Part shown: positions 16,545 to 39,895 of the stretch, piece after piece | How positions within the stretch are numbered: the stretch's first letter is position 1 | Layout of the letters: the number at the start of each line of letters is the position of its first letter | Source: Macrostomum lignano | Lineage: Eukaryota | Assembly: GCA_002269645.1 (NCBI GenBank) | Contig: NIVC01000215.1 | Location: 372,001-436,000, forward strand | Reading direction: 5' to 3' | DNA: 64,000 nt | Translations under genes and position numbers: made by a program | The notes under the pieces: generated by a model | Seen by the model: the letters and a program-made list of their open reading frames with translations, nothing else | Databases searched by the model: none | What the model was told of the DNA's origin: nothing

Positions 16545-17545
16545 GCTTTTTACATCATCCAGTTCAAGATGTTTATATCATCTAGTTTATAATGTTTATA
16601 TCGTCCTGTTTAGGGTGTTTATATCATCCTGTTTAGGGTGTTTAAATCATCCTATTTATGGTGTTTATACCATCCTATTTAGGGTGTTTATATCATCCTA
16701 TTTATGGTGTTTATACCATCCTATTTAGGGTGTTTATATCATCCTATTTATGGTGTTTATACCATCCTATTTAGGGTGTTTATATCATCCTGTTTAGGGT
16801 GTTTATATCATCCTGTTTAGGGTGTTTATATCATCCTGTTTAGGGTGTTTATATCATCCTGTTTAGGGTGTTTACATCATCCTGTTTAGGGTGTTTATAT
16901 CATCCTGTTTAGGGTGTTTATATCATTCTGTTTAGGGTGTTTATATCATCCTGTTTAGGGTGTTTAAATCATCCTATTTATGGTGTTTATACCATCCTAT
17001 TTAGGGTGTTTATATCATCCTGTTTAGGGTGTTTATATCATCATGTTTAGGGTGTTTATATCGTCCTGTTTAGGGTGTTTATATCATCCTATTTAGGGTG
17101 TTTATATCATCCTGTTTAGGGTGTTTATATCATCCTGTTTAGGGTGTTTATATCGTCCTGTTTAGGGTGTTTATATCGTCCTGTTTAGGGTGTTTATATC
17201 GTCCTGTTTAGGGTGTTTATATCATCCTGTTTAGGGTGTTTATATCATCCTGTTTAGGGTGTTTATATCGTCCTATTTAGGGTGTTTATATCATCCTGTT
17301 TAGAGTGTTTATATCGTCCTGTTTAGAGTGTTTATATCATCCTGTTTAGGGTGTTTATATCGTCCTATTTAGGGTGTTTATATCGTCCTGTTTAGGGTGT
17401 TTACATCATCCTGTTTAGGGTATTATATCGTCCTGTTTAGGGTGTTTACATCGTCCTGTTTAGGGTGTTTATATCGTCCTGTTTAGGGTGTTTATATCGT
17501 CCTGTTTAGGGTGTTTACATCGTCCTGTTTAGGGTGTTTATATAA
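16545..17545 (+). repeat. 23-bp minisatellite (TCATCCTGTTTAGGGTGTTTATA)n
   Basis: About 43 tandem copies downstream of the IF stop; degenerate units also at about 18390-18520 and 27295-27425. Confidence 0.93.
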
Positions 17546-18036
17546 CTCCAATTTTCGAATATTAGTTTTACTTCTCATGAAACAAACAAAGGAGTCGTTG
17601 TTGAGTTGCTCCTTAACAATTTTTAACCGCTGCAATAAAATGTGAGATCAAGTGTTTGTTTGTTTATCTTTTTCGCTTTATTTGAATTCTTAAAAGCTGT
17701 CAGAGAAATTCATTTCATTTCGCCTGCCTTAACCTCGAAACACAGAACGCACAAAACTCAGTCGCTACTTACTTAGTAGTTCCGATTGTATAATTTAAAC
17801 CAAATTTTGTAACTTTGTGTTCATTTTTAAGACCATAGCGTTTTTACTTTTCTATAGTTGTTTTAATAGTCTCATATATTAATGTAAGAACGCCTTCAAA
17901 TTTCGTTCAAATTGTGTTTTATCTCCACAAAAATGACTCACTCAATCCATGTCTAAAACTTTTGCCTTATCATGCCAATTTTTGAAAGCAACAAAAATAG
18001 CTTTTAAATAGCGCCTGTTTTATTTACCAGAAAATT

Positions 18037-18645
18037 TAGACCGCTTAGCAAATGCTTAAATGCACGCGCAACCGCTTTTCCTGCTCTACTTATAGTAGTC
18101 TGTGTCAGACTCATTAGCACCAAATAATTATATTTTATGCTCTAAATATTAAACGATTTCTTGGAAAAAAACTAATAAAAAATAACAATTACAGGAATGC
18201 TTGACGCATTCTACAATGATTATTCTTAGCGATATTACTAATCTGGCCGGCATCTGTCTCCTTGTCATTATTTTAGTCAATATGATTATTTTTATAAAAC
18301 AAATTTGAAAGAGTGAAACAGGTTGCTTGTAGTAGTAGTAGTAGTATGTAGGGGCATTTTGTGAAGTTTTTTGTATTAAAAAGGCTTATTTCTAGGCCGT
18401 TTATATGTTTAGTGTAGGCTGTTTATATCCTCCTGGTTAGTGTGTTTATTAAGTCCAATTTTGAATATTTATATCGTATAGGGTGTTTACATCGTCAAGT
18501 TTAAGGTGTTCATATCATCCAGCTTAGAGTCCAGATTTACTGGATAAGTAGTAATGGCAGTAGTAGTAGTAGAGGCAGTAGTAATAGTAGTAGTGGCAGT
18601 AGTAGCAGTAGTAGTAGCAGTAGTAGTAGTAGTAGTAGAAGTAGC

Positions 18646-18689
<44 letters not shown>

Positions 18690-18786
18690 CAGTAGTAGTA
18701 GTAGTAGTAGTAGCAGTAGTAGTAGTAGTAGCAGCAGTAGTAGTAGTAGTAGTAGTAGTAGCAGTAGTAGTAGTAGTAGTAGTAGC

Positions 18787-18818
<32 letters not shown>

Positions 18819-18983
18819 CAGTAGTAGTAGTAGGAGTAGTAGCATTAGTAGTAGTAGTAGTAGTAGCAGTAGTAGTAGTAGTAGCAGCAGTAGTAGTAGT
18901 AGTAGTAGTAGTAGTAGCAGTAGTAGTAGTAGTAGTAGCAGTAGCAGTAGTAGTAGTAGCAGTAGTAGTAGTAGTATAGTAGC

Positions 18984-19015
<32 letters not shown>

Positions 19016-19055
19016 CAGTAGTAGTAGTAGTAGCAGCAGTAGTAGTAGTAGCAGC

Positions 19056-19093
<38 letters not shown>

Positions 19094-19094
19094 C

Positions 19095-19132
<38 letters not shown>

Positions 19133-19244
19133 CAGTAGTAGTAGTAGTAGCAGCAGTAGTAGTAGTAGCAGTAGTAGTAGTAGTAGTAGTAGTAGTAGCA
19201 GTAGTAGTAGTAGTAGTAGCAGTAGTAGTAGTAGTAGTAGTAGC

Positions 19245-19276
<32 letters not shown>

Positions 19277-19550
19277 CAGTAGTAGTAGTAGTAGCAGCAG
19301 CAGTAGTAGTAGTTGTAGTAGTAGTAGTAGTAGTAGTAGCAGTAGTAGTAGTAGTAGTAGCAGTAGTAGTAGTAGTAGCAGTAGTAGTAGTAGTAGCAGT
19401 AGTAGTAGTAGCAGTAGTAGTAGTAGTAGCAGTAGTAGTAGTAGTAGTAGTAGCAGTAGTAGTAGTAGTAGTAGCAGTAGTAGTAGTAGTAGTAGTAGCA
19501 GTAGTAGTAGTAGTAGTAGTAGTAGCAGTAGTAGTAGTAGTAGTAGTAGC

Positions 19551-19585
<35 letters not shown>

Positions 19586-21040
19586 CAGTAGTAGTAGTAG
19601 TAGCAGCAGTAGTAGTAGTAGTAGTAGTAGCAGTAGTAGTAGTAGTAGTAGTAGTAGCAGTAGTAGTAGTAGTAGTAGCAGTAGTAGTAGTAGTAGTAGT
19701 AGTAGCAGTAGTAATAGTAGTAGTAGTAGTAGTAATAGTAGTAGTAGTAGTGGCAATAGTAGCAGTAGTGGTAGTAGTCGTAGAAGTAGTAGAAGTAGTA
19801 CGAGCTAGTAGTAGTACTAGTGGTAGTAATACATGTAGTTTTAATAGCAGCAATAGTAACTCACAAGCCAATAAAAAGTAAGAGTAAACCGTACGTGCAA
19901 ACGACCATCTTCCTCAATTTCTTTAATTGAACAGCTGCCTGTTAACACAACACAGCCGTCTTCAGTTCCATAGTTTACGATTAAAAGTATACAAACTTGC
20001 AATTATATTTGACCTAACAATTTACAAACTGAAACATAATCAACTAATTTTAGAATCGAAAAATGATATTTTTTCTTTAAAGCAAACAGCATATCGATGG
20101 GTTACAAAAGCAGTAAAAATGCATTAGAAATTGGATTGCAAACTTTTATTCATAGCCTCGCGAAACGCAATTTATTAAAATATTTTCACTGACCCTAATG
20201 CACCTATAGACCTGACCCCAAAACTCCTACAGACCTGACCCCAAAACCCCTACAGACCTGACCCCAAACCCCTACAGACCTGACCCCAAACCCCTACAGA
20301 CCTGACCCCAAAACCCCTACAGGCCTGACCCCAAAACCCCTACAGACCTGACCCCAAACCCCTACAGACCTGACCACAAAACCCCTACAGACCTGACCCC
20401 AACCAATACCACTAGACCTGACCCCAAAACCCCTACAGACCTGACCCCAAAACCCCTACAGACCTGACCCCAAAAACCCTACAGACCTGAGCCCAAACCC
20501 CTACAGACCTGACCCCAAACCCCTACAGACCTGATCCCAAAACCCCTACAGACCTGAACCCAAAACCCCTACAGACCTGACCCCAAAACCCCTACAGACC
20601 TGACCCCAAAACCCCTACAGACCTGACCCCAAACCCCTACAGACCTGACCACAAAACCCCTACAGACCTGACCCCAACCAATACCACTAGACCTGACCCC
20701 AAAACCCCTACAGACCTGACCCCAAAACCCCTACAGACTTGACCCTAAAACCCCTACAGACCTGACCCCAAAACCCCTACAGACCTGACCCCAAAACCCC
20801 TACAGACCTGACCCCAAAACCCCTACAGACCTGACCCCAAAACCCCTACAGACTTGACCCCAAAACCCCTACAGACCTGACCCCAAAACCCCTACAGACC
20901 TGACCTCAACCCCCTGATCAGCTCAAGCTGATCACACAGCACTACAATTCAAATGCAAAAAGCGCAGAAAGGCACCCGTTTGCTGCCGTCAGCACTCAGC
21001 AGAGCCACTCTGCAACAGTCAATACAAGCGCACATGGTCT
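18037..21040. repeat. Direct duplication copy B (3004 bp) flanking the retrotransposon 3' end
   Basis: Starts TAGACCGCTTAGCAAATGC and ends AATACAAGCGCACATGGTCT, as does 26940-29904. Unique parts are near-identical. It includes a (GTA)n tract (about 18550-19870), a 22-23 bp array (about 20205-20915) and the last 30 codons of SNAPC3. Confidence 0.95.
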
Positions 21041-21132
21041 TGACTTGACTTAGCTGCAGGGCTGTCCCGGAGGGGACACAGCGGGAAGGCGCGGGCGCCC
21101 ATTCCGCTAGTCCCTGAACGGCCGACGCGTCG

Positions 21133-24100
21133 CTATGGACGGAGGGTTGGCGCCGCCCAGGGAGGTCCCCCAGTGTCGCCAGCAGCTATGGTGCTCTCTG
21201 GAAAGGAGAGTTCAGCCCTGCGGGTGGCCCGAAGGTAGCGCATGAGCTGATTAAAGTTTTCGGGTTTGCACGCTTCAGTAATAGATGTGTGTGGCCCGAG
21301 GGAAGTGAGTCTGGCCCGCGTGAAGGCGGGACAGATGCTGACGAAATGCTCAGCGGTTTCGTCACCTGAATTGCAGAAACTACAGGTGGCGTTGGTGGCG
21401 TTGCCCTGCAGGTACTGGTGCCTGGAGAAGCAGCCGTGACCAGAGAGGGTCATGGTGGCAGCCCGGATGTCTCTGCGCGAGAGGCGCAAGAGGAGCTTCC
21501 GGAGCTGGTGAGAGGGCTGAGGGACAGCGCCTCTGGATTGCCTGCAGTTCGTGCGGTTCGCCCAAGTCGAGCGGTGCTGAGTCCTGATCCACGCTTTGAT
21601 GCGCGAGTCGATGACACAGCCAGGAATCGGGACAAGAGGTTCGGGGCCGAGAGAGGAGCCGGAGGCACCAACTTTTGCAAGGGTGTCAGCCAACTCATTT
21701 CCTCGGATCCCCACATGCCCCGGAACCAACTTAAGGGTAATTTTGTTGGCGGAACCCAACACATTGAGGAGTTTGATACAGTCAAGGACTGTAGCAGAGT
21801 TGGTGCTGCAGCCACTGATGGCGTGCAAGGCAGCTTGGCTGTCCGAATGGAAAATGATGTTCTTACCAGTAACGCCAGTGGCGAGAAGCTCTGCAGTGCA
21901 GGAGCTGATGGCCAGAACTTCATTTTGGAAAACACTGGAGTTGACCCCAGTGTATTGAGCGTGGGTAGCGATGACCCTCCCGTTCAAAAGATTCCAACAC
22001 CAAAGCCGGTGTTGGCTGACTGCTTAGAACCGTCGGTGTAGCAATGAAGCTCACCAGGGTTCCAATGGTCATTGATGTTATCGCGCGAGTCGATAGCTAC
22101 GGAGTAGCGCTGTCTCAGGTTGAGCGTTGAGGCAATGCCATCGGTGAAGACGCGATTGGCCTGACACTCGTTGAGAAAGTTGAGGCACAGATCGCTATGC
22201 GGGACAAGGTTCCGCTTAGCAGGTGCTCTCATGTAAATGAATTTGACGCCGGCATCAATTAGACGCCGCGTCGTTCTAGCCGCCTCACCCCTGATGAAGA
22301 GGTCAAGAGGCGGAAGATTAAGAAAGGCCCCCATGCCAGCAAAGGGCGTGGACCTGGTGGCGTTGCAGATGAGCCTACACGCTCTGCCTTGGATCGTGTT
22401 GAGCAGGTCTGCATGGCTTTTGACCTGGGTAGCGCTAACCCAGACAACAGAGGCGTACGTAATGGCAGGTCTAACTACGGAAGTATAGATCCACCAAAGC
22501 CGCTTTGGGGATAGACCCCAAGAAGTGCCAAGTGCTCGTCGGAGCTGGGCCAGGATGGCTGAGGCACGCTTAGCTTTTGCTTTCACGTGGAAGGACCAGT
22601 TGAGCCGGTGGTCAAGTGTGACCCCGAGACATCTGGTCTGGTGCGCGAAGGCAATATCTCTGCCGTAGAGCTGCAGAGGACGTATGTTCCAGCGTAGTCT
22701 GCTGGTAAACATAATGGCAACGGTTTTGGGCTCAGAGAGTTCCAAACCATTGTCATTGGCCTAGGATTCTGCTTTGCGGATAAAGCTCTGCATCAGATCC
22801 CTGAGCGTGCTGGGAGACGGTCCTGCCACAATGGCCGTGACGTCATCAGCATACCCGACTTTGAAGACGGGGTCAGGTCGGGAGTCACTCAGAAGAGCGT
22901 CCATGACCAGGTTCCAGAGCGTCGGGGTGAGGACTCCGCCTTGGGGTCCACCCTTACAGACTCTGGTGGAGGCGTTTGCCCAAGAAGTTGGGCAGTGGCC
23001 GTACGGTTGGAGATCATGTACATGATCCACCGTATGAGGGTAGCATGAGCTTTGCGATTTTGAAGGGCCCTCTGAAACGCTTCAAAGATAACGTTGTCGA
23101 AGGCGCCAACAATGTCAAGAAAGAGAGCCAGGGCGTAACCGTCACCCAGTACCGCCCGTTCAATCTTTTCGACAATCGCATGCAGGGCGCTGTCAGTCGA
23201 CCTCCCGGTACGGAAGGCGTGCTGATTATTGCTGAGGGGCATCGCTGTCAGCTCGCAGGAGAGCAGCCGCCAGAGAATAAGCCTCTCAGTGAGCTTAAGC
23301 ATTGCTGACGTTAAGCTAATTGGCCGGAAGGCCTTGACGCTTTGGTAGTCACCCTTCCCAGGTTTGGGAATAAAGACTACTCGAGCTTCAGTCCAGCTTT
23401 TGGGAACGTATCCCAGCTGGATAGAGGCCCGCATAAGATTGCGGGTGAGTCTCAGGAACGAGGGTATCTTGGCTGCTTCACGAAGGAGAACAGGGTAGAT
23501 ACCATCAGGTCCAGGAGATTTGAAGGGTTTGAAGGTTCTGACCGCACGAGCGATTAGGTCTTCAGTGACAATGCCCGCCGCTAGGGTGGCTCCATCCATC
23601 GAATGGTTGGGCTCCGGTCTAGCAGTAGGTACCCTCGGGAAGAATGTGCTAAGCATATGCTGAAGCACTTCTTCAGGGTCTTTAGTAAGAGAGCCATCAT
23701 CTTTTTTGATCATGGCTAATTTGGACATTTTGTCCATTGTAAGGGCCTTGACAAGCCTAGAAGTAGGTCTGTCTTGATCCAATTCATTGCAGAATTGGCG
23801 CCACTTACATTCCTTGGCCTTGTGCACTTCAGATTTGAAATTGCGGGAGGCTTGCCGGAAAAGCTCCATGTCCTCCGGGTTTCCGGTCTTCATGGCACGG
23901 CGATGAAGGCTTTTGGCCTTCCGCCTGAGTTTCCCCAGCTCCGGGTTCCACCACGGCGCCGAGGTCTTGCCTTTGTAGGCGCGAGCAGGACAAGCCGCTT
24001 CGTAGGCTTCAATAATGCAACCTGTCAGCGTCTCAGCCATATGATCCACATCCTCGCAGGTCTCAATCGGACGTAAGTCCGTGAGTTCCTGCAGGTGCAG

Positions 24101-24871
24101 ATCAAGGGCAGCCTTGTAGGCCGCCCAATCAGTGTTGCGGATATTGCGTCTCCAAGTGATCGGAGACTGGGTTTTAGTGTCCGCGATGTTAAAGGCGATA
24201 AAGCAGTGGTCAGACAGGGAGGGCTCCTCAGACCAGACTCTCCACTCCTCAACTCTGTCAAAGAGTCTTGGGGTAACGAGTGTGGCGTCGAGGACCTCGG
24301 TCCATCTGCCATTATTAAAGGTAGGAGTGCTGCCGCGGTTGCAGAGCATGAGGTTTGTGTTAGAGATGAGGGCCAGAAGCTCCTCTCCTCTAGTGTTGGT
24401 ATCTTTGCTGCCCCAGTGCTTGTGGTGCGCGTTGAGGTCGCCCCCTAAGCACAGCTCAGCGTTCTGGGACTCGCAGTACTGCGCAAGGCGCAGTAAACTC
24501 TCGGGAGCAGGGTCTCTGTCGCCTGGGATATAAACCGAGGCAACAAGACACGTACGCGGAGAGAAATGATTAGATTGGATGACGCAAAGGTCTCCATCAG
24601 AGAGATCAGTCCTCAGCCAAGCCTGGAGATGGCTAGCAGCGAGGATAGCCGCTCTAGGGCGGCTGTTCCCCGGGCCACACACATAAAAATCAGAGTAGCC
24701 AGAGGGAATGTTGGGCAACTTACCGTTGCGCATCCAGGGTTCCTGGATCAGGATGAGGCCTGGCTTGTACAGCTCAGCAATCTTCATCAGATTTACTGAC
24801 GCAGATACGCAATGCTGTAAATTTATTTGCAGACAGAATGTCGCTCCTTTGGCAGCGTGGAGCTTAGTCAT
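21133..24871 (-). pseudogene. ORF2 of the non-LTR element (endonuclease, reverse transcriptase, RNase H, CCHC-like finger) with three lesions
   Basis: APE motifs CLQINLQH, IQEPW, GDLNAHH and SDH; RT motifs PISLTS, LDIVGAFDNV, PQGGVLTPTLW and YADDV; RNase H motifs YTDGSK, SDSQAA and VPGHVGIRGNELAD; C-terminal CSFC...EHFVSIC. Lesions are a 1-bp frameshift near 22975, an in-frame TAG at 22761-22763 (likely from TGG), and a 1-bp frameshift in a T run near 21988. Confidence 0.9.
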
Positions 24872-24910
24872 ACTGTATTAAATGCAATATCTGGCTAGAG
24901 CCCAGGGCCA

Positions 24911-26420
24911 TCAAGGAGACTTGGACAACAGATCGTCCTCGTCCCAGGCCGCTGGGGCTTGACTGGGAGATGGGAGTTGGTCGACGTCCATGGCCTCCTC
25001 ACCCCACCGGCCCCCCCCCCCAGCAGAGTCCTCAGGCTCCGATGACAGGATGGAGGAAGCTTCCTCACCTGCATCTTTACCTTCAGACCCCACCAAGGTG
25101 GCCGAGGAGAGCTCGGATTCCGAAGACCCGGCCTCGTCCTCAACTCCTTCTCCGACTGGCAGGTTTGGTTCCCGGGGCTTGGCCGGAGCCGTTACCGCGG
25201 TCGCCGAACTGCTGCTAGCAGAGGGGCGAGATGCAGCTTTGGCTTTGGGATCGGCTTGCGCCTTTCCTTGGGCCTTAGACTGCGCCCCGCTCTTGCCGGA
25301 GATGCCGGGGTTGGCAGTAGCCTTCCCTTTGGCAGACTTTCCTCGGCGCAACTTGAGCTTGAGGGCACCCAGCTGGAAAGAGGATCCATTAGGGTACCGA
25401 CTCGCCCAAGTGCTGGAAAGGCCGAGGACAATTGAGTTGCCCGTCTCCCCCCTGCGGACTTTACGGTGATACACCAGTCCACTAGCAGGGAGGTCGGGGT
25501 TCAGACGCAGTAGGACCCGGCGAATAACGTCTGGTCCAGCTGCGGTGCTCTTAGCAGGGACGAAAACCACATAGGGTATCGTCTTTGGACGCTGGCCCTC
25601 ACGAAGAAAAAGAGCTCCGCCAAGGTCAGCATCCAAGGAGACCGTCGGTAGCCGCTGGAGCAGCCGCCGAGCGTCCTCCTCGCTGCTAGGAGCAATAAGA
25701 ACGAATGTGCTTCGCAGCACCATCCGCTCAACGCCGATGGAGATTCCCTCCTCGACAGTCAGCTCAATCAGATAGGAGTCAACAGCACTCCACACTTTTT
25801 GAAGCTGATCAGTGGTCCAGTCCTGGTCGCGACCTTGGATGATCACTCCCGGGATTTTGGCCTTGGCCTTCGCCGCAAAGGTAGCTCCCGAAGGAACCTC
25901 CTTGTTGGCAGTGGCCATTTGTTGCGCCGTGGTTTCGGCCTCAGCAGCCGCGGCAGCAGCTCCAGGGAGCGCCGCCGCTGAACTACTGGAGCTTCCACCG
26001 GCCGGCCCGCCTGGTTGCCTTGGGACTCCAGTCGCTTCAGCATCCATGGTGGACGCCGCCGCTTTGGCCCCCGCAGCTCCCTTCTTGGCCTGCCTTTTGG
26101 CGCGTTGTTTAGCGCGTTTGCGCTCAAGCCGAGCCCGCTGAGCTTCATCGGATCTGCCAGATTTGGCCGGTCCTTTAGGCTCAGAGCTCGCGGTTCCCTT
26201 AGATCCACCAGCGGAGCTGGCAGGTCTTAGGGTATTTTGAGTTTGGTAGCTCTGGTCGGATCTGCCAGCAGAGCCAGCCGGTCCTTCCTTTGCCACAGTT
26301 GAATCAGTCGGTTGGGATCTGCCAGCAGGGCCGGCCGGTCCTTCGGACTGAGGTTGGGGTTTAGAAGGGTCCCCGTCCCTGGAAATAGCTTGTTTATCCA
26401 TAGTCGGCTCGAAGGCCATG
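24911..26420 (-). CDS. ORF1 of the non-LTR element (basic/Ala-rich N-terminus, central globular domain, acidic tail; no CCHC knuckle)
   Basis: Intact ORF from the first ATG at 26420 (MAFEPTMDKQ) to 24911, 40 bp before ORF2. The central region resembles LOA-clade ORF1 (DUF4780-like) by recollection, not by search. Confidence 0.8.
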
Positions 26421-26939
26421 ATAAAAGGTTGGTGGGCTACCCTCAAAGGGGCGCGGTACCCACCCGGCCGCTCCACCTGACCGGGCAGTAGGCCAATAGC
26501 ACCCTCAAGGCTGGCCCGACACCAGGAGGGGGACCGCTTGCGACCGGACTACTCCCCGGCCTTCCAGCCCATCGGCACGGTCAACACCTTAGGCATTAGA
26601 GAGTACGTTGAGCAGTACCACGGCCTTCAGGTTGGCGAGCCAGACCCGCATACCCAAATTCGGCCGAAGCCACTGGATAGGGTCGCCAGCGCCGGAGCCC
26701 AGTCTGTCCAGCAGCCCTAGGGACTGCCTTGAACACACGCGGGGACGAGTACCCTGGGTCGACTTGCGAGACAGCGTGGGGGGGGGGTCTGCGGCTGCCA
26801 GAGGCAAATAGAGGGTGCAGACCTCCCACCAGCCTTGACCTGCTGAAGATAGGGGCAGGCGTGAAGCATCGCAGACCTTAGCCCATGGGCCTAGTCTGTC
26901 TCATACTTCACTGGCATGCTGAATACGCCTTCGCGTGAA

Positions 26940-27549
26940 TAGACCGCTTAGCAAATGCTTAAATGCACGCGCAACCGCTTTTCCTGCTCTACTTGTAGTA
27001 GTCTGTGTCAGACTCATTAGCACCAAATAATTATATTTTATGCTCTAAATATTAAACGATTTCTTGGAAAAAAACTAATAAAAAATAACAATTACAGGAA
27101 TGCTTGACGCATTCTACAATGATTATTCTTAGCGATATTACTAATCTGGCCGGCATCTGTCTCCTTGTCATTATTTTAGTCAATATGATTATTTTTATAA
27201 AACAAATTTGAAAGAGTGAAACAGGTTGCTTGTAGTAGTAGTAGTAGTAGTATGTAGGGGCATTTTGTGAAGTTTTTTGTATTAAAAAGGCTTATTTCTA
27301 GGCCGTTTATATGTTTAGTGTAGGCTGTTTATATCCCTGGTTAGTGTGTTTATTAAGTCCAATTTTGAATATTTATATCGTATAGGGTGTTTACATCGTC
27401 AAGTTTAAGGTGTTCATATCATCCAGCTTAGAGTCCAGATTTACTGGATAAGTAGTAATGGCAGTAGTAGTAGTAGAGGCAGTAGTAATAGTAGTAGTGG
27501 CAGTAGTAGCAGTAGTAGTAGCAGTAGTAGTAGTAGTAGTAGAAGTAGC

Positions 27550-27587
<38 letters not shown>

Positions 27588-27738
27588 CAGTAGTAGTAGT
27601 AGTAGTAGTAGTAGCAGTAGTAGTAGTAGTAGTAGTAGTAGCAGTAGTAGTAGTAGTAGTAGCAGTAGTAGTAGTAGTAGTAGTAGTAGTAGCAGTAGTA
27701 GTAGTAGTAGTAGTAGCAGTAGTAGTAGTAGTAGTAGC

Positions 27739-27770
<32 letters not shown>

Positions 27771-27795
27771 CAGTAGTAGTAGTAGTAGTAGTAGC

Positions 27796-27851
<56 letters not shown>

Positions 27852-29904
27852 CAGTAGTAGTAGTAGTAGCAGCAGTAGTAGTAGTAGTAGTAGTAGTAGC
27901 AGTAGTAATAGTAGTAGTAGTAGTAGTAATAGTAGTAGTAGTAGTGGCAATAGTAGCAGTAGTGGTAGTAGTCGTAGAAGTAGTAGAAGTAGTACGAGCT
28001 AGTAGTAGTACTAGTGGTAGTAATACATGTAGTTTTAATAGCAGCAATAGTAACTCACAAGCCAATAAAAAGTAAGAGTAAACCGTACGTGCAAACGACC
28101 ATCTTCCTCAATTTCTTTAATTGAACAGCTGCCTGTTAACACAACACAGCCGTCTTCAGTTCCATAGTTTACGATTAAAAGTATACAAACTTGCAATTAT
28201 ATTTGACCTAACAATTTACAAACTGAAACATAATCAACTAATTTTAGAATCGAAAAATGACGTTTTTTTCTTTAAAGCAAACAGCATATCGATGGGTTAC
28301 AAAAGCAGTAAAAATGCATTAGAAATTGGATTGCAAACTTTTATTCATAGCCTCGCGAAACGCAATTTATTAAAATATTTTCACTGACCCTAATGCACCT
28401 ATAGACCTGACCCCAAAACTCCTACAGACCTGACCCCAAAACCCCTACAGACCTGACCCCAAACCCCTACAGACCTGACCCCAAACCCCTACAGACCTGA
28501 TCCCAAAACCCCTACAGACCTGATCCCAAAACCCCTACAGACCTGAACCCAAAACCCCTACAGACCTGACCCCAAAACCCCTACAGACCTGACCCCAAAA
28601 CCCCTACAGACCTGACCACAAAACCCCTACAGACCTGACCCCAACCAATACCACTAGACCTGACCCCAAAACCCCTACAGACCTGACCCCAAACCCCTAC
28701 AGACCTGACCCCAACCAATACCACTAGACCTGACCCCAAACCCCTACAGACCTGACCCCAACCAATACCACTAGACCTGACCCCAAACCCCTACAGACCT
28801 GACCACAAAACCCCTACAGACCTGACCCCAACCAATACCACTAGACCTGACCCCAAAACCCCTACAGACCTGACCCCAAAACCCCTACAGACCTGACCCC
28901 AAAACCCCTACAGACCTGACCCCAAACCCCTACAGACCTGACCCCAAACCCCTACAGACCTGATCCCAAAACCCCTACAGACCTGAACCCAAAACCCCTA
29001 CAGACCTGACCCCAAAACCCCTACAGACCTGACCCCAAAACCCCTACAGACCTGACCCCAAACCCCTACAGACCTGACCACAAAACCCCTACAGACCTGA
29101 CCCCAACCAATACCACTAGACCTGACCCCAAAACCCCTACAGACCTGACCCCAAACCCCTACAGACCTGAACCCAAAACCCCTACAGACCTGACCCCAAA
29201 ACCCCTACAGGCCTGACCCCAAAACCCCTACAGACCTGACCCCAAACCCCTACAGACCTGACCACAAAACCCCTACAGACCTGACCCCAACCAATACCAC
29301 TAGACCTGACCCCAAAACCCCTACAGACCTGAACCCAAAACCCCTACAGACCTGACCCCAAAACCCCTACAGACCTGACCCCAAACCCCTACAGACCTGA
29401 CCCCAAACCCCTACAGACCTGATCCCAAAACCCCTACAGACCTGAACCCAAAACCCCTACAGACCTGACCCCAAAACCCCTACAGACCTGACCCCAAAAC
29501 CCCTACAGACCTGACCCCAAACCCCTACAGACCTGACCACAAAACCCCTACAGACCTGACCCCAACCAATACCACTAGACCTGACCCCAAAACCCCTACA
29601 GACCTGACCCCAAAACCCCTACAGACTTGACCCTAAAACCCCTACAGACCTGACCCCAAACCCCTACAGACCTGACCCCAAAACCCCTACAGACCTGACC
29701 CCAAAACCCCTACAGACTTGACCCCAAAACCCCTACAGACCTGACCCCAAAACCCCTACAGACCTGACCTCAACCCCCTGATCAGCTCAAGCTGATCACA
29801 CAGCACTACAATTCAAATGCAAAAAGCGCAGAAAGGCACCCGTTTGCTGCCGTCAGCACTCAGCAGAGCCACTCTGCAACAGTCAATACAAGCGCACATG
29901 GTCT
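26940..29904. repeat. Direct duplication copy A (2965 bp) flanking the retrotransposon 5' end; native 3' end of SNAPC3
   Basis: Matches 18037-21040 but has a shorter (GTA)n tract (about 27450-28010), a longer ACAGACCTGACCCCAAAACCCCT array (about 28400-29775) and a few substitutions. Confidence 0.95.
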
Positions 29905-32900
29905 CGTCAAACAGCTCGTCGCAATCTGAAATCAAAAGTTCAGCCCGAGCCGAGCGGCACAGCTGGCAGTCTCGGTAGGCAAAAGTCAACGAGGAGAAGC
30001 CGTGACTGAATCTGGCTAACGGCAGATTCTCGGGATCGGTCGCTGGATGCTTCAAGCTGACGTCAGAGAACACTATGATGTGCTCGCAGTTGGCCGCGTG
30101 CTGGTACAGGTAAAGCTCTCCTAGTCTCAAGGTTAGCGACGAGATTCTCGTAGATTCCATCGTGTGAGCAGTTAGTGATTCGCCAAATTCTTGTCTGGCT
30201 TTGGAGTTTTCCGACAGCCACTTCAACACCGTGGCGCTGAGTCGTCGGTTAAATGGTAATCGACAATCGTCATAGAGGCCAAGGCCGATGTGAAACATTG
30301 ACGAGGTGTACACGTCGCGACTGCGGGAGCAGCGCTCCGACATGGCCTGGCGAGGGTTGTCGCTGGACAGCTGGCGGTGGGGTTGCATGGTGAGGCGATT
30401 CTTAGAGTTAAGAGTGGTCTATAGGCGATTGCTAAAGACATTTAGAGACGATTCTTAGAGTGGTCTATAGGCGATTGCTAAAGACATTTAGAGGCGATTC
30501 TCAGGGTGGTTTAGGAGCGATTTCTTAAGACATTTATAGGCGATTCTCAGGGTGGTCTAAAGGCGATTGCTAAAGACATTTAGAGGCGATTCTCAGGGTG
30601 GTTAAGGAGCGATTTCTTAAGACATTTAGAGGCGATTCTTAGAGTTATTTAGGAGCGATTTCTAAAAAGCATACTACGAGTAGGTACTTTGCCTTTGGCA
30701 TAAAAGGAAGCAATAAGGCCATTGTTTTCCGATTCGAGATTAAATAATCCGTGCAGTTGTCCAGCTAAATTCTAAATAGCGGCATTCCTGCTACATTTAC
30801 TCATATGTTAATAAATTTCATAGGTAAGTTTTTGCAGTGCCCTATTCCGACCCTTTGTCAGTAGATGAATGCTGTTCAATAAGGCTGAATACATATAATG
30901 TAGCTGATGTAGAAGGCTGCGTACGGCTGTTCAGCCCAAGGACTGGGGGGTCGCCACACACCCACCAATTTTACAGCTGGGTGAACTGAAGCAATGCAGA
31001 GTTAAGTGTCTTGCTCAAGGACACTAATTGTTCCGAGTGGGATCCGGAATCGAACCCACGACCTTTAAGTCGTGAGTCCGATGCTCTGACCACTAGGCTA
31101 CCATCCCCCTCCTTCCCAGCATGGTCAATAGATACAGTCCCAGCACTGTCCCTTAAAATGGGCAATGACTTCAAGTTTTACATCTAAAATACACTACTAT
31201 GCTAGATGCTCCGAGCCCCCCGATAACCAAAGGCTAAAATGCCGGATTTTATCAATGAAAACTGAACAAAGAAAATTGCATGCAAGCTGCAGCCGGTAGA
31301 AATTGAATTCGAATGAAATACGTTCTTTATTAATATTCGTTTAGACCGTTAGAATTTTTGTATTGAAGTTATCATAAGTTTGTTATCGTGTCTGGAGTCT
31401 CACTGCAGCACAAACTTCACCCAGTCGTCGCTGTTCTCGATCTCCTGCTCAACCTGGGCGTCACTGAACTGCAGCAGTCGGCACTGGCCGAGGGCTTTGT
31501 TGTACAGCACGCTCCTGGTGTTCGGGACTTTGCCCAGTGCAGCCATGAGGCATTCAAGCACTTGGGTGACTTTATGCAGGTCGGTGTAACAGTACTGAGT
31601 GTTGTAATTAGTGCGTTTGAATGGCACCTTCACCCAGGTGGCAACTGGCGACTGGACGCGGTGAGGTGGAGCGAATTCGCAGGCGAATCCCTTGGCATCA
31701 AAGCAGCGCTGATCCACAAGCCGGTGGCTGTTGTCGTTCGCCTGTAACACGCAGTCCTGATTCCCGTTGCTGCTTGGCATTGAGCCGTACCACAGCGCAT
31801 TGTCCATCGGCAGCTTTCTGCCCATTTCAATAATCGAGATCTTTTGTTTTGCGTCGGGCCAACAAAAAAACTGCCATATCCCAATGCCACTGCCTGGCAT
31901 AACAGACAGAATTTCATTAGCTGAAAATCAACGAAGCTCTTTTCATCTTTGCCGACAGTGAATTATATCTACCGGTAGCTATTTATGTTTACATTTAGCA
32001 TGAAAGAACTGGCTTTTAGTGATCAGTCAAGACTGAGGAGTCATTTAGGGCTCCAATTGTTCGGCTTCCCTTTTTGACTATGCTGAGATGAAAAGAAAAA
32101 ATACTCATAATGAGATGCAGTTTTCCCTGAAAATATGTTTTCAAAAGAAGACATTGTTTTTAAGACAATAAATGTTGGTTGCCATGACAACTAAAATTCC
32201 ATTTTTATTACGTTTCCCCCCAAAATTGAATCGTAAAAATAAGTATTCATTATAACTGGACGTTAAATTATTATAGTTATTAAGCTGATTCTTAATGTGG
32301 TTCAGGGAAATTCTCAGGGTGGTTCAGGGGCGATTCTCAGGGTGTTTAGCGGCGATTCTCAAAGTAGTTTAGGGACGATTCTCAAGGTGGTTTGAAGGCG
32401 ATTCTCAGGATGGTTTAGGGGCGATTCTCAGGGTGTTTAGCGGCGATTCTCAAAGTAGTTTAGGGACGATTCTCAAGGTGGTTTGAAGGCGATTCTCAGG
32501 ATGGTTTAGGGGCGATTCTCAGGATGGTTTAGGGGCGATTCTCAAGGTGGTTTGAAGGCGATTCTCAGGATGGGTTGAAGGCGATTCTCAGGATGGGTTG
32601 AAGGTGATTCTCAGGATGGTTTGAAGGCGACTCTCAGGATGGTTTGAAGGCGATTCTCAGGATGGTTTAGGGGCGATTCTCAGGATGGTTTAGGGGTGAC
32701 TCTCAGGATGGTTTAAAGGCGATTCTCAGGATGGTTTAGGGGCGATTCTCAGGATGGTTTAGGGGTGATTCTCAGGATGGTTTGAAGGCGATTCTCAGGA
32801 TGGTTTAGGGGCGATTCTCAGGGTGGTTTGAAGGCGATTCTCAGGATGGTTTGAAGGCGACTCTCAGGATGGTTTGAAGGCGACTCTCATGATGGTTTGA

Positions 32901-35900
32901 AGGCGATTCTCAGGATGGTTTTAACAGTAGAACTACCAAGAGGGGGGGGGGAATCCCCCCCCTGACAATTTTTTGCTGCGCCGGAACGGAGCAACGCATG
33001 CACACGAAATTCAAAAACACAGGCTAACTTTTTGTTGCGCACCTTCTCAAACAAGAATCAAGTCGCCAGCCCTACGGACCGTTGAGATATTCGACGATTC
33101 TGCCAGAAGGTCGGATTTTTCCCATAACTGCTAGTGTATTCAGTACACCCCTGTGCGCCAAACAGCACTGCGCCTCAGTGCAGCCTTGCCAAGTCTCCAA
33201 ATTTCATCAGCACGTCGACCACATGTGTTTGCATCAGCTCTGACTTCGTTGGTCACTAGCCTTCACCAAGGTGGAGCTTCTGGACCCTCAACAGCTGTGG
33301 CATCAGGTGACTATGGACACCCTGATGCGGAATTCTCTAGTTTTGCCAATCAAGCCTCAGCAGTGGGCAAGAATCAACCGCCAGACATTCTCAGCTAGTC
33401 TCTCAAGCATTCCGTCATCATTTCGACGCCGTCGGCTCCTTCAACGGATTACACCAGGTGACTATGGACAGCCTGATAAGAATTTCTCTAGTTTCGCCGA
33501 TCCAGCCTCGACAGCGGGCAAAAATCAACCGCCAGACATTCTCAGCTAGTTTCTCAAGCATTCCGTCATCATTTCGACGCCGTCGGCTCCTTCAACGGAT
33601 TACACCAGGTGACTATGGACAGCCTGATAAGAATTTCTCTAGTTTCGCTGATCAAGCCTCGACAGCGGGCAAGAATCAACCGCCAGACATTCTCAGCTAG
33701 TCTCTCAAGCATTCCGTCATCATTTCGACGCCGTCGGCTCCTTCAACAGATTACACCAGTTGACTATGGACAGCCTGATAAGAATTTCTCTAGTTTCGCT
33801 GATCAAGCCTCGACAGCGGGCAAAAATCAACTGCTGGACATCCTCAGCTAGTCAGTCAAGCATTCAGCCATCACCCCGACGCCGTCGGCACCTTCAACAG
33901 ATTACACCAGGTGACTATGGACATCCTGTTGGAACTATGTCAGATTTTTCTTATTAAGCTTCAATAATGGGCAAACCTCAACTGCCGGACATTCTCAGCT
34001 AGTATCTCGAGCCTTCAGTCATCACCCCGACGCCGTCGGCACCTTCAACAGGTGGAACCAGGTGAGTAAGGACACCTGAGCGTGATTTTTCATCATGCTC
34101 TTAACATTTCTAAAGCTCTCAAAATTTTTTAAGCACTGGACATTGCTATAGTTAAGCTTGAACTCAAATTGGGTTCAATATTATAGTTGAATAAACTAAA
34201 CAGTTTGTCAAATAAAATATGTATGTAGCTCGCATGTATAAAAGTATGTGTAATAATAATATAAATATACAGCAACATGAGTTATGTATATTATTATCAG
34301 GATGGCTGGCTAAAAGGTAGACAAGAAGCAACATGACTGCAAGAAACCCACCAGTTCAGACACGTCGCCAACAATGACATCGTCCTGGCGGCAGCAGATC
34401 TGATCCTTCAGATCAGCCAGAGTGTGCCGGCCTTGCAGCAGAATGAGCTGACTGCAGCGCAGGTAGTTAGCAAAGGACCTGGCCACACCGCGCCCTCCAA
34501 CATCTGGCAGGGGAACGTACACCCGAACGGTCACTAGAAGGTCGTCCATCTCGCTAGGCGACAGAGGCTTAGCGAACTGCTTGACTGGCAGACTGGCTCT
34601 GTCGTGAGCGCACAGCAGTTCTATAGCGGGAAGCCGATCCCTGTTGTTGAGGAATCCTGACGCTGCTTTGGACAGCGGCTCCGAGTTTTGGCGCAACCTT
34701 CTCAGCGTTGCCAATGTTGAAATTTGATGGCGCGGATTGCGCAGAGAATTTGGGCTGAGGAAGCTGCACAGACCTGCGGGATTCGGGATGGCGCTGTGGG
34801 ATTAAATATGAGGGATTTTGAAAGGCTTCAGATACAATGGGATTTGGGAAGAAATAGGATTTTAGAATAGGATTTGAAAAAGATGGATTTTTACAATGGG
34901 ATTAGGGAAAAAATGGGATTAAACAATGGGATTAAGGAAGAAATGGGATTTTACAATGGGATTTGGGAAGAAATTGGATTTTACAATGGAATTTGGGAAG
35001 AAATGGGACTCTACAATGGGATTTGGGAAGAAATGGGACTTTACAATACAATGGGATTTGGGAAGAAATGGGATTCTATAATGGAATTTGGGAAGAAATG
35101 GGATTCTACAATGGAATTTGGGAAGAAATGGGATTCTACAATGGAATTTGGGAAGAAATGGGATTCTACAATGGAATTTGGGAAGAAATGGGATTCTACA
35201 ATGGAATTTGGGAAAAAATGGGATTTTACAATAGGATTTGGGAAGAAATGGGATTCTACAATGGGATTTGGGAAGAAATGGGATTTTACAATAATTTTTG
35301 GGAAGAAATGGGATTCTACAATGGGATTTGGGAAGAAATGGGATTTTACAATAGGATTTGGGAAGAAATGGGATTCTACAATGGGATTTGGGAAGAAATG
35401 GGATTCTACAATGGAATTTGGGAAGAAATGGGATTCTACAATGGAATTTGGGAAGAAATGGGATTCTACAATGGAATTTGGGAAGAAATGGGATTCTACA
35501 ATGGAATTTGGGAAGAAATGGGATTCTACAATGGAATTTGGGAAGAAATGGGATTCTACAATGGAATTTGGGAAGAAATAGGATTCTACAATGGAATTTG
35601 GGAAGAAATGGGATTCTACAATGGAATTTGGGAAGAAATGGGATTCTACAATGGAATTTGGGAAGAAATGGGACTCTACAATGGGATTTGGGAAGAAATG
35701 GGATTTTACAATACAATGGGATTTGGGAATAAATGGGATTTTACAATAGGATTTGGGAAGAAATGGGATTCTACAATGGAATTTGGGAAGAAATGGGATT
35801 CTACAATGGAATTTGGGAAGAAATGGGACTCTACAATGGAATTTGGGAAGAAAGGGACTCTACAATGGAATTTGGGAAGAAATGGGATTCTACAATGGAA

Positions 35901-39558: not shown

Positions 39559-39645
<87 letters not shown>

Positions 39646-39692
39646 TAGACAGACACTAAGACAGACAGACAGACAGACAGACAGACACAGAC

Positions 39693-39743
<51 letters not shown>

Positions 39744-39842
39744 CTAAGACAGACAGACAGACAGACAGACAGACACTAAGACAGACAGACAGACAGACAG
39801 ACAGACACTAAGACAGACAGACAGACGGACAGACAGACACTA

Positions 39843-39895
<53 letters not shown>

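What the first reader, a model, noticed from the sequence alone, without database searches (positions are those of the whole stretch)
18037..29904. A ~3-kb target-site-like duplication around a LINE that spares SNAPC3
Seen: the 5.9-kb element is flanked by direct repeats of 3004 and 2965 bp whose ends coincide to the base with the element's 5' and 3' ends (X-element-X). The 3' junction lies inside the last coding exon of SNAPC3 (29904, at ...DETMCACIDCC), and the tail AAGTC-AAGTC runs into target AGAC. Because X is duplicated, the gene keeps its C-terminal zinc finger, stop codon and 3' region, while an orphan 30-codon copy sits at about 20949-21040. Established: non-LTR TSDs are normally a few to tens of bp. 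Inference: second-strand cleavage 3 kb away, or replication/repair-coupled insertion, and the event survived selection because it rescued a probably essential gene. A simple two-haplotype misjoin cannot create both novel junctions. The copies differ in opposite directions in their (GTA)n and 23-bp array lengths and by a few SNPs.
Basis: partly seen in the sequence, partly recalled or inferred. Interest (0 to 1): 0.8.

Follow-up and report, generated by a model that had tools for sequence, protein, structure and literature searches.

The report
LINE insertion with 3-kb target duplication

Summary
X1 (18037-21040) and X2 (26940-29904) are direct repeats with sharp ends, and they flank a 5,899-bp minus-strand LINE (21041-26939).

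The window is 100% identical to M. lignano assembly Mlig_3_7, contig NIVC01000215.1. Two paralogous (subgenome) SNAPC3 loci in that assembly carry the empty site. There A|X and X|B are contiguous, X is single-copy and no LINE is present. X is therefore host DNA, not part of the element.

Two sister elements share the LINE's 3'UTR stem-loop, its ...CCCTGCAGCTAAGTCAA end and a 5'UTR block. The element's ends are therefore genuine.

Both inferred nick sites read GGTCT^ on opposite strands.

The best explanation is one target-primed insertion with a 3.0-kb target-site duplication. Kilobase-scale duplications of this kind are documented for human L1 (cultured cells, cancers) and for Dualen in Chlamydomonas. 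This is a new example, not a new kind.

Three intact SNAPC3 copies exist, and the animal is an inbred laboratory line.

No reads could be examined. The assembly is a 2017 PacBio/Canu draft, so an artefact is unlikely but not excluded.

The parts
18037..21040 (-). X1, the distal copy of the duplicated target (3,004 bp), joined to the LINE 3' tail at 21040|21041 and continuous with native downstream DNA (B) at 18036|18037
   Evidence: At 4 of the 5 sites where X1 and X2 differ, X1 has the state shared with the paralogous loci.
20949..21040 (-). Orphan copy of the SNAPC3 C-terminus: 2 nt of the split GAG codon, then 29 codons (TMCACIDCC...FCAFCI) and the stop
   Evidence: Identical to 29813-29904.
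21041..26939 (-). Full-length or nearly full-length LOA-like LINE (5,899 bp): 5'UTR, ORF1, APE-RT-RNase H ORF2, 3'UTR
   Evidence: No second copy in the window. Absent from the paralogous loci.
21041..21051 (-). 3' tail AAGTCAAGTCA, the last part of the conserved end ...CCCTGCAGCTAAGTCAA
   Evidence: Sister elements L004 and L005 share the motif, then carry variable AAGTCA-like repeats, then unrelated flanks.
21073..21114 (-). Conserved 3'UTR stem-loop (GGGACUAGCGG-AAU-GGGCG-loop-CGCCU-..-CCGCUG..CCC)
   Evidence: The stems are conserved in three elements and the 4-nt loop varies. One compensatory pair.
21133..21987 (-). ORF2 C-terminal piece with the RNase H domain and a Cys-rich tail
21984..22745 (-). 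ORF2 middle piece (C-terminal half of RT). A 1-nt frameshift in a T run (T4 here, T5 needed) separates it from the RNase H piece at 21984-21987.
22889..24871 (-). ORF2 N-terminal piece (APE endonuclease and N-terminal half of RT). A frameshift relative to relatives lies at about 22952-22988.
24911..26476 (-). ORF1 (521 aa as listed; no Pfam match)
   Evidence: The sister element L004 has a 525-aa ORF1 in the same position.
26477..26939 (-). 5'UTR. A block conserved with L004 starts about 30 nt from the element's 5' end.
26940..29904 (-). X2, the gene-side copy of the duplicated target (2,965 bp). It supplies the SNAPC3 C-terminus, the stop codon and about 2.9 kb of 3' flank, and is joined to the LINE 5' end at 26939|26940.
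   Evidence: It carries the derived state at 4 of the 5 sites that differ.
29813..30370 (-). Last coding exon of SNAPC3 (BOX15_Mlig020528g2). The A|X2 boundary at 29904|29905 lies inside it.
34310..34714 (-). ORF holding the upstream SNAPC3 coding exon (...LLVTVRVYVPL...DLKDQICC...GDVSEL)
29900..29909 (+). Inferred first-strand (primer-strand) nick site, GGTCT^CGTCA on the window + strand
   Evidence: Inference from the position of the 3' junction.
18032..18042 (-). Inferred second-strand nick site, GGTCT(A)^AATTT on the window - strand (element-sense strand)
   Evidence: Inference from the position of the 5' junction. One base (A) is ambiguous.
20189..20915 (.). 23-bp minisatellite in X1 (31 copies). 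The element-sense strand reads GTCTGTAGGGGTTTTGGGGTCAG.
28384..29773 (.). The same 23-bp minisatellite in X2 (60 copies)
18547..19828 (.). (AGT)n array in X1 (about 1.28 kb). The X2 counterpart at 27451-28022 is about 0.57 kb.

Best explanation
One retrotransposition event of a young LOA-like LINE (APE, RT, RNase H) produced a 3.0-kb target-site duplication.

Shown:
- The paralogous loci show the pre-insertion arrangement A-X-B.
- The window locus is A-X2-LINE-X1-B, with nothing added or lost at any junction.
- The LINE's 3' tail abuts X1 and its 5' end abuts X2.

Inferred steps:
1. The element's endonuclease nicked the strand complementary to SNAPC3 at GGTCT^CGTCA, inside the last coding exon.
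2. That 3'-OH primed reverse transcription of the LINE RNA from its AAGUCA-repeat tail.
3. The 5' end of the insertion was completed from a 3'-OH on the other strand, 3.0 kb downstream, at GGTCT(A)^AATTT.
4. X was then copied on both sides by long fill-in or strand-displacement synthesis.

I favour a second cut by the element's own endonuclease at an inverted cognate site. The close variant is that the gene-side broken end copied 3 kb from a sister or homologous chromosome (break-induced, replication-like synthesis) before joining the cDNA.

Because X starts inside the exon, the gene-side copy X2 restores the complete SNAPC3 reading frame and 3' flank automatically. No selection is needed for that outcome.
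For: - Exact X-LINE-X structure.
- Empty sites in two paralogous loci, to the base: L001 22034|22035 and 24052|24053; L003 19047|19048 and 20728|20729.
- Both X copies are of the window type. They are 98-99% identical to each other and 89-92% identical to the paralogs.
- The LINE domains are present.
- The 3'UTR stem-loop and terminal motif are shared with sister elements L004 and L005, after which the flanks diverge.
- The 5'UTR block is shared with L004, whose contig starts 1 nt from the equivalent of the element's first base.
- The family is multi-copy and young. M. lignano gene models carry pieces at 92-99% identity.
- GGTCT lies immediately 5' of both inferred nicks, on opposite strands. 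AGACC occurs once in X, as its first 5 nt. The background frequency is about 0.0007 per position per strand. The L004 tail is also followed by GACC.
- Precedent for kilobase-scale duplications.
Against: - No reads, read depth or second individual could be examined. Mlig_3_7 is a Canu assembly of PacBio CLR reads with only 64% error-free bases by REAPR.
- No other genomic copy of this family could be fetched. The family's usual duplication length and target motif are unknown.
- The GGTCT coincidence was noticed after the fact. It rests on one event plus one sister element, and L005 does not show it.
- The element-sense strand of X holds 29-58 closer GGTCT sites in the minisatellite that were not used.
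- Unwinding 3 kb between two nicks needs help that is not demonstrated (helicase, replication fork or strand displacement).
- X2 carries 4 of the 5 derived differences. This fits the break-induced-synthesis variant better than a symmetric fill-in, but it is not statistically significant.
Confidence: 0.65

Rival explanations
1. Assembly artefact. The contig walks into the 5.9-kb multi-copy LINE from one place and out at another, or duplicates X from reads with different minisatellite lengths. The real locus would then hold one X.
For: - Mlig_3_7 is a draft with many flagged errors and a hidden-polyploid, repeat-rich genome.
- The LINE family has near-identical copies elsewhere.
- The X1/X2 differences (a few SNPs and array lengths) look like allelic differences.
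Against: - Both junctions join an exact end of X to an exact end of the LINE, with no shared sequence that could seed a false overlap.
- Both X copies are of the window type, and the other two subgenome copies are accounted for.
- The line is inbred with negligible within-subgenome heterozygosity.
- A chimeric path through the LINE would still need two real insertions, one at each end of X.
Confidence: 0.1
2. Two steps: an older tandem duplication X-X, followed by a LINE insertion exactly at the X|X joint with a target-site duplication of 0-1 bp.
For: - The hypothetical joint GGTCTA|AGACC would be a near-palindrome carrying the candidate target motif on both strands.
- One base (A) at the junctions is ambiguous.
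Against: - It needs the insertion to hit one position in about 6 kb.
- The paralogs show no X-X duplication.
- The X copies are nearly identical, so the duplication is as young as the insertion.
- It does not explain why the duplication starts exactly where the LINE tail is.
Confidence: 0.05
3. RNA-mediated copy. After reaching the 5' end of the LINE RNA, the reverse transcriptase switched to the 3' end of a SNAPC3 read-through transcript and copied X as RNA back into the exon. The break was then healed by homology with the exon, as in U6-L1 type chimeric retrocopies.
For: - X2, the gene-side copy this model makes anew, carries 4 of the 5 derived differences and large changes in repeat length.
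- The LINE and SNAPC3 have the same orientation.
Against: - There is no poly(A) or other tail between X2 and the LINE 5' end.
- The end of X lies 12 nt upstream of an AATAAA, not at a cleavage site.
- X has no intron that could test the model.
- The model does not explain GGTCT at the end of X.
Confidence: 0.05
4. Two independent same-orientation insertions of the family, one at A|X and one at X|B on different chromatids or alleles, followed by unequal crossing-over within the LINE.
For: The family is active and multi-copy. The product would have this structure.
Against: - It needs two rare hits 3 kb apart.
- No short target-site duplications are visible at either junction.
- The motif at X|B is on the wrong strand for a same-orientation first-strand nick.
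Confidence: 0.03

Closest known systems
Large target-site duplications of human L1 in cultured cells (Gilbert 2002/2005 and Symer 2002, as cited in Servant et al., Genetics 2017, PMC5223499)
   Same: A de novo LINE insertion is flanked by direct duplication of the target, from over 100 bp up to the size range of copy-number variants. The explanation offered is a second nick or 3' end far from the first nick.
   Different: - L1 clade: poly(A) tail, no RNase H.
- Somatic cell culture, frequent only when nucleotide excision repair is defective.
- Here the element is LOA-like with a short-repeat tail, and the event sits in an assembled animal genome.
1-10 kb tandem duplications at L1 insertions in cancers and experimental clones (bioRxiv 10.1101/2024.12.14.628481)
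   Same: Same size class. [quoted passage not shown]
   Different: Those are somatic events in p53-null or tumour cells, and no germline transmission is involved. The reciprocal-end model predicts no sequence motif at the distal boundary, whereas one is seen here.
Dualen-4b_cRei insertions in Chlamydomonas mutation-accumulation lines (Genome Res 2023, PMC9977147)
   Same: Heritable de novo LINE insertions outside mammals, with duplications of median 900 bp flanking the element.
   Different: - Dualen carries two endonucleases (RLE and APE), which the authors invoke as the cause. Only an APE domain was found here.
- In Dualen the long duplication is a family-wide habit. Here only one event is known.
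R9 elements of bdelloid rotifers (126-bp duplication; Gladyshev and Arkhipova 2009, as cited in PMC9977147)
   Same: A non-LTR element with an unusually long duplication set by a distant second cut.
   Different: R9 is site-specific in rDNA with a fixed 126 bp. Here the duplication is 25 times longer and lies in a protein-coding gene.
Tandem duplications from paired nicks on opposite strands (nickase experiments; recalled from memory, not checked here)
   Same: Two nicks on opposite strands that leave 5' overhangs, plus fill-in, duplicate the sequence between them.
   Different: The distances tested are tens to about a hundred bp, and no reverse-transcribed insert is involved.

Membership tests
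Non-LTR retrotransposon (LINE), APE type with RNase H (LOA-like) | Apurinic-type endonuclease domain N-terminal to the reverse transcriptase in ORF2 | tested here: met
   Pfam Exo_endo_phos_2 5.6e-21, Exo_endo_phos 9.8e-14 and RVT_1 5.9e-12 in 22889-24871
Non-LTR retrotransposon (LINE), APE type with RNase H (LOA-like) | RNase H domain C-terminal to the RT | tested here: met
   Pfam RNase_H 9.2e-06, 26.3 bits against a cut-off of 25.8. Relatives with intact ORF2 have APE, RT and RNase H.
Non-LTR retrotransposon (LINE), APE type with RNase H (LOA-like) | Placement in the LOA clade by RT phylogeny | tested here: inconclusive
   The best named hits are Lian-Aa1-type proteins at 37% identity. No phylogeny with reference elements was built.
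Non-LTR retrotransposon (LINE), APE type with RNase H (LOA-like) | Defined 3' end shared by family members, no LTRs, ORF1 upstream | tested here: met
   3'UTR stem-loop and CCCTGCAGCTAAGTCAA end shared with L004 and L005. ORF1 of 521 aa against 525 aa in L004.
Non-LTR retrotransposon (LINE), APE type with RNase H (LOA-like) | Intact coding capacity (autonomous copy) | tested here: not met
   As assembled, ORF2 has two frameshifts. One is a T4/T5 run and could be a PacBio consensus error.
Target-primed insertion with target-site duplication | Direct repeats of target DNA abut both element ends exactly, and the empty site holds one copy | tested here: met
Target-primed insertion with target-site duplication | Duplication of a few to tens of bp (canonical length) | tested here: not met
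   3,004 and 2,965 bp. This places the event in the documented 'large TSD' subclass.
Target-primed insertion with target-site duplication | Family-specific endonuclease motif at the first nick | tested here: inconclusive
   GGTCT^ here and GGTC^ in L004, but not in L005. No other copies were available.
LINE-associated kilobase-scale duplication (large TSD) | The event arose in one step with the insertion | not testable with these tools
   This needs a population or pedigree sample, or de novo events.
Composite or LTR-like element in which X belongs to the element | X travels with the element and is absent from empty sites | tested here: not met
   X is present once at both LINE-free paralogous loci, in the same A-X-B context. 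It starts inside the conserved SNAPC3 domain.
3' or 5' transduction by a LINE | The extra sequence derives from the flank of the source copy and lies inside the duplication, with the tail after it for 3' transduction | tested here: not met
   X is the local target sequence. The tail lies between the LINE and X1, and there is no tail after X.
SNAPC3 (snRNA-activating protein complex subunit 3) | Match to the Pfam SNAPC3 domain, including the C-terminal Cys-rich part encoded in X2 | tested here: met
   PF12251 3.6e-30, profile positions 25-196 of 199 over residues 10-189 of 191. The annotated protein PAA87834.1 ends at the X2 stop codon.

The most novel reading that the evidence does not exclude
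In this LINE family the element's own endonuclease makes the second-strand cut at a cognate GGTC(T)^ site in inverted orientation. The length of the target-site duplication is then set by the distance to the next accessible inverted site. The family would therefore regularly produce duplications of hundreds of bp to kilobases that copy exons and gene ends in M. lignano. That would be an APE-only counterpart of the Dualen behaviour, and a natural system for studying second-strand cleavage.
Probability: 0.15. Interest if true: 0.65.

Novelty: new member of a known kind. Interest (0 to 1): 0.42.

Why it matters
How LINEs cut and synthesise the second strand is the least understood step of their integration. 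A cleanly resolved natural event is a useful data point here. It has base-exact junctions, paralogous empty sites and the same 5-mer at both inferred nicks. If reads confirm it, it suggests that second-strand cleavage by the element's own nuclease can occur kilobases away. It also shows how a LINE hit inside a coding exon can leave the gene intact and create a duplicated gene end, which is one route to segmental duplication. For users of the M. lignano genome, it flags a structure at NIVC01000215.1:390037-401904 that needs read-level validation.

Tried and rejected
- Other copies of the LINE in the window: none. No LINE RT homologue elsewhere in the window or in L001/L003.
- Exact-protein look-ups for the window's ORF2 piece and for the M. 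lignano gene models P0022 and P0033: nothing on record. DNA of other family copies, and hence the family's usual duplication length, could not be obtained.
- The third protein search used a chimeric query: ORFs spanning both junctions, the middle of ORF1, and the C-terminal RT and RNase H pieces. It found many UniRef-only M. lignano models with LINE pieces. None had DNA, and no listed hit looked junction-spanning.
- P0061 (sister element): the DNA was not retrievable.
- ML2-based SNAPC3 models gave no independent view of the junctions. P0052 and P0056 (window type) stop before the last exon. P0055 is a paralog-type model fused to the upstream gene.
- Rfam scan of 17000-31000: no family matched.
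- Considered and rejected:
  - X as part of a composite or LTR-like element, because the empty sites contain X.
  - Transduction, because X is the local target.
  - A misjoin between subgenome copies, because both X copies are of the window type.
  - GCTAAG shared by the end of X and the LINE 3' end as a mechanistic signal, because no geometry makes it useful and it may be chance.

Full report
**Source of the window.** Window 19813-46899 is 100% identical to a stretch of Macrostomum lignano assembly Mlig_3_7 (GCA_002269645.1), contig NIVC01000215.1. Record coordinate equals window coordinate + 372000. That assembly was made from PacBio RSII reads of the inbred DV1 line with Canu 1.4 and polished with Pilon. 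REAPR rated 64% of its bases error-free (PMC5730564). The genome is a neopolyploid with three subgenome copies (S, L1, L2) and negligible heterozygosity within each (PMC10733133).

**The observation.** The repeat finder and BLAST give direct repeats X1 = 18037-21040 and X2 = 26940-29904. The bases just outside differ at all four edges, so the boundaries are exact.
- X consists of about 390 bp unique sequence, an (AGT)n array, about 360 bp unique sequence, a 23-bp minisatellite and 126 bp unique sequence.
- The (AGT)n array is about 1.28 kb in X1 and 0.57 kb in X2. The minisatellite has 31 copies in X1 and 60 in X2.
- The unique parts differ at only five sites.
This includes the orphan 29 codons plus stop at 20949-21040 and the junction inside ...CDELFDE|TMCACIDCC.

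**The element.** The 5,899 bp between the copies (21041-26939, minus strand) holds:
- a 521-aa ORF1;
- an ORF2 with APE endonuclease, reverse transcriptase and RNase H domains;
- a 92-nt 3'UTR ending in AAGTCAAGTCA;
- a 463-nt 5'UTR.

The best named relatives are Lian-Aa1-type (LOA-like) proteins at 37% identity. As assembled, ORF2 has two frameshifts. One is a T4-for-T5 run and may be a consensus error.

Many M. lignano gene models in UniRef contain pieces of the element at 92-99% identity, so the family is young and multi-copy.

Two sister elements with DNA were fetched: L004 (a Logan contig with intact ORF1 and a 1,232-aa ORF2, 56% identity) and L005. They share a 3'UTR stem-loop with conserved stems and a variable loop. 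They also share the terminal motif CCCTGCAGCTAAGTCAA, followed by a few AAGTCA-like repeats and then unrelated flanks. The window element's 3' end at 21041 is therefore a genuine LINE 3' end.

A 5'UTR block starts about 30 nt from the element's 5' end. The L004 contig begins 1 nt from the equivalent of the element's first base. The copy is therefore full-length or very nearly so.

**X is host DNA, and the empty site exists.**
- The SNAPC3 gene of the window is BOX15_Mlig020528g2 (PAA87834.1). Its last exon (29813-30370) matches the Pfam SNAPC3 domain to profile position 196 of 199, so the 29 codons in X2 are native SNAPC3.
- The assembly has two further copies, g3 (L001) and g1 (L003), on other contigs.
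- In both, the exon runs straight into X (L001 22034|22035; L003 19047|19048), and X runs straight into the downstream flank B (L001 24052|24053; L003 20728|20729).
- In both, X is present once (2.0 and 1.7 kb) and no LINE sequence is present.
- This is the pre-insertion arrangement A-X-B. The window locus is A-X2-LINE-X1-B, with no base added or lost.
- This refutes the idea that X belongs to the element. It also refutes transduction.

**Real or artefact.**
- Both X copies are of the window type. They are 98-99% identical to each other and 89-92% identical to the paralogs, so the structure is not a join between subgenome copies.
- There is no sequence shared between the end of X and the LINE's 5' end, or between the LINE's tail and the start of X, that could seed a false overlap.
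- A chimeric path through the repeated LINE would still need two real insertions, one at each end of X, on a haplotype that is effectively unique in an inbred line.
- I therefore rate an artefact as unlikely (about 0.1).
- No reads or depth could be examined. The older ML2-based gene models give no view of the junctions.

**Mechanism.** In element-sense orientation the target was ...TTTGACG|AGACCATG...[X]...GCGGTCTA|AATTTTC....
- The 3' junction places the first nick on the complementary strand at GGTCT^CGTCA.
- The 5' junction places the other 3'-OH on the element-sense strand at GGTCT(A)^AATTT. One A is ambiguous.
- The same 5-mer therefore sits immediately 5' of both inferred nicks, on opposite strands.
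- AGACC occurs once in X, as its first five bases. The background frequency of the 5-mer is about 0.0007 per position per strand. In L004 the tail is also followed by GACC, but not in L005.
- This favours a second cut by the element's own endonuclease at an inverted cognate site, followed by long fill-in.
- Two points count against this reading. The motif was noticed after the fact. The 23-bp repeat also offers 29-58 closer GGTCT sites on the right strand that were not used.

That repeat reads GGGGTTTTGGGG on the SNAPC3 sense strand and matches G-quadruplex patterns. That this could make those sites inaccessible, or stall replication, is my inference.

A second clue points the other way. When the five X1/X2 differences are polarised with the paralogs, X2 is derived at four of them: a 2-nt deletion, +TAC, T>C and TA>CG. 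X1 is derived only at one A-run indel. X2 is the copy that would be newly made if the gene-side broken end copied 3 kb from a sister or homologous chromosome before joining the cDNA. This is the model proposed for 1-10 kb L1-associated duplications. The asymmetry is not statistically significant.

An RNA template-switch origin of X2 is disfavoured. There is no tail at the X2|LINE joint, and X ends 12 nt upstream of an AATAAA rather than at a cleavage site.

**Comparison with what is known.** Target-site duplications of LINEs are normally under 30 bp.
- Duplications over 100 bp occur in under 10% of L1 insertions in HeLa cells. They occur in 57-91% of insertions in cells deficient in nucleotide excision repair, where they reach copy-number-variant size (PMC5223499).
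- Tandem duplications of 1-10 kb at L1 insertions in cancers and experimental clones are explicitly called large target-site duplications.
- Dualen-4b in Chlamydomonas mutation-accumulation lines gives heritable duplications of median 900 bp (PMC9977147).
- The present case is a new example in a different LINE clade and phylum, at the upper end of the size range. It is not a new kind of event.

**The selection claim.** All three SNAPC3 copies are intact and 98-99.5% identical in protein. The window copy shows 12 synonymous against 2-4 non-synonymous codon differences from the others in the last exon. The gene was under constraint long before the insertion, but it is redundant now. The duplication is very young and sits in an inbred laboratory line. 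That the gene is spared follows mechanically from the geometry of a long duplication. Survival by selection is neither needed nor shown.

**Verdict.** The structural interpretation is supported by empty sites and by genuine element ends. The event belongs to a known though rare class. Read-level validation and a family-wide survey of duplication lengths and nick motifs are the decisive missing steps.

Noticed in passing
window 20189-20915 and 28384-29773 (also shorter arrays in L001 and L003): The 23-bp minisatellite just downstream of the SNAPC3 stop codon reads GTCTGTAGGGGTTTTGGGGTCAG on the gene's sense strand. There are 9 G-quadruplex-type matches in X1 and 13 in X2. Copy number differs twofold between the two X copies.
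   Followed up: partly
window 21073-21114 (-); L004 about 5875-5925; L005 about 2440-2480: A conserved 3'UTR stem-loop with a variable 4-nt loop is shared by three LOA-like elements, 22 nt upstream of the shared CCCTGCAGCTAAGTCAA end. It is probably the RT recognition signal of this group. There is no Rfam match.
   Followed up: partly
window 18037-18049 (-) and 21041-21054 (-): The last 13 nt of X (GCTAAGCGGTCTA; GCTAAGTGCTCTA in the paralogs) and the LINE's last 14 nt (GCTAAGTCAAGTCA) both start with GCTAAG. I found no geometry in which this helps the insertion, and it may be chance.
   Followed up: no
window 18037-18440 and 19829-20190 against 26940-27345 and 28023-28385: When polarised with the paralogous loci, the gene-side copy X2 carries 4 of the 5 derived differences, including T>C and TA>CG. 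X1 carries only an A-run indel.
   Followed up: partly
window 21984-21987 and about 22952-22988 (-): The LINE's ORF2 has two frameshifts as assembled. One is a T4 run where relatives need T5, which suggests a residual PacBio homopolymer error rather than a dead copy.
   Followed up: partly
window 38021-45196 (-) = L002 1704-8879: A gene for a protein of about 1,258 aa with faint Myb-domain hits lies directly upstream of SNAPC3 in all three subgenome copies. A UniRef model (P0055) fuses it to SNAPC3. A SNAPC4-like identity is my guess and was not tested.
   Followed up: no
proteins P0022, P0033, P0057, P0063, P0091, P0094, P0101, P0116, P0136 (UniRef, M. lignano): Older M. lignano gene models splice pieces of this LINE into host proteins (ABC transporter, annexin, fibrinogen-domain protein, GPCRs). 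These are annotation chimeras that inflate domain combinations.
   Followed up: partly
window 14791-15114 and 15556-15920: Two arrays of a 28-bp repeat lie in inverted orientation about 440 bp apart, with arms 94-95% complementary.
   Followed up: no
window 34874-36207: A tandem array translates in several frames as MGFYNGIWEE / FGKKWDSTME-type repeats, just upstream of the SNAPC3 exon at 34310-34714. It is probably a non-coding minisatellite.
   Followed up: no
window 55206-56258 (-): An ORF with a weak Peptidase_M41 (FtsH-type) match, 1.1e-07.
   Followed up: no
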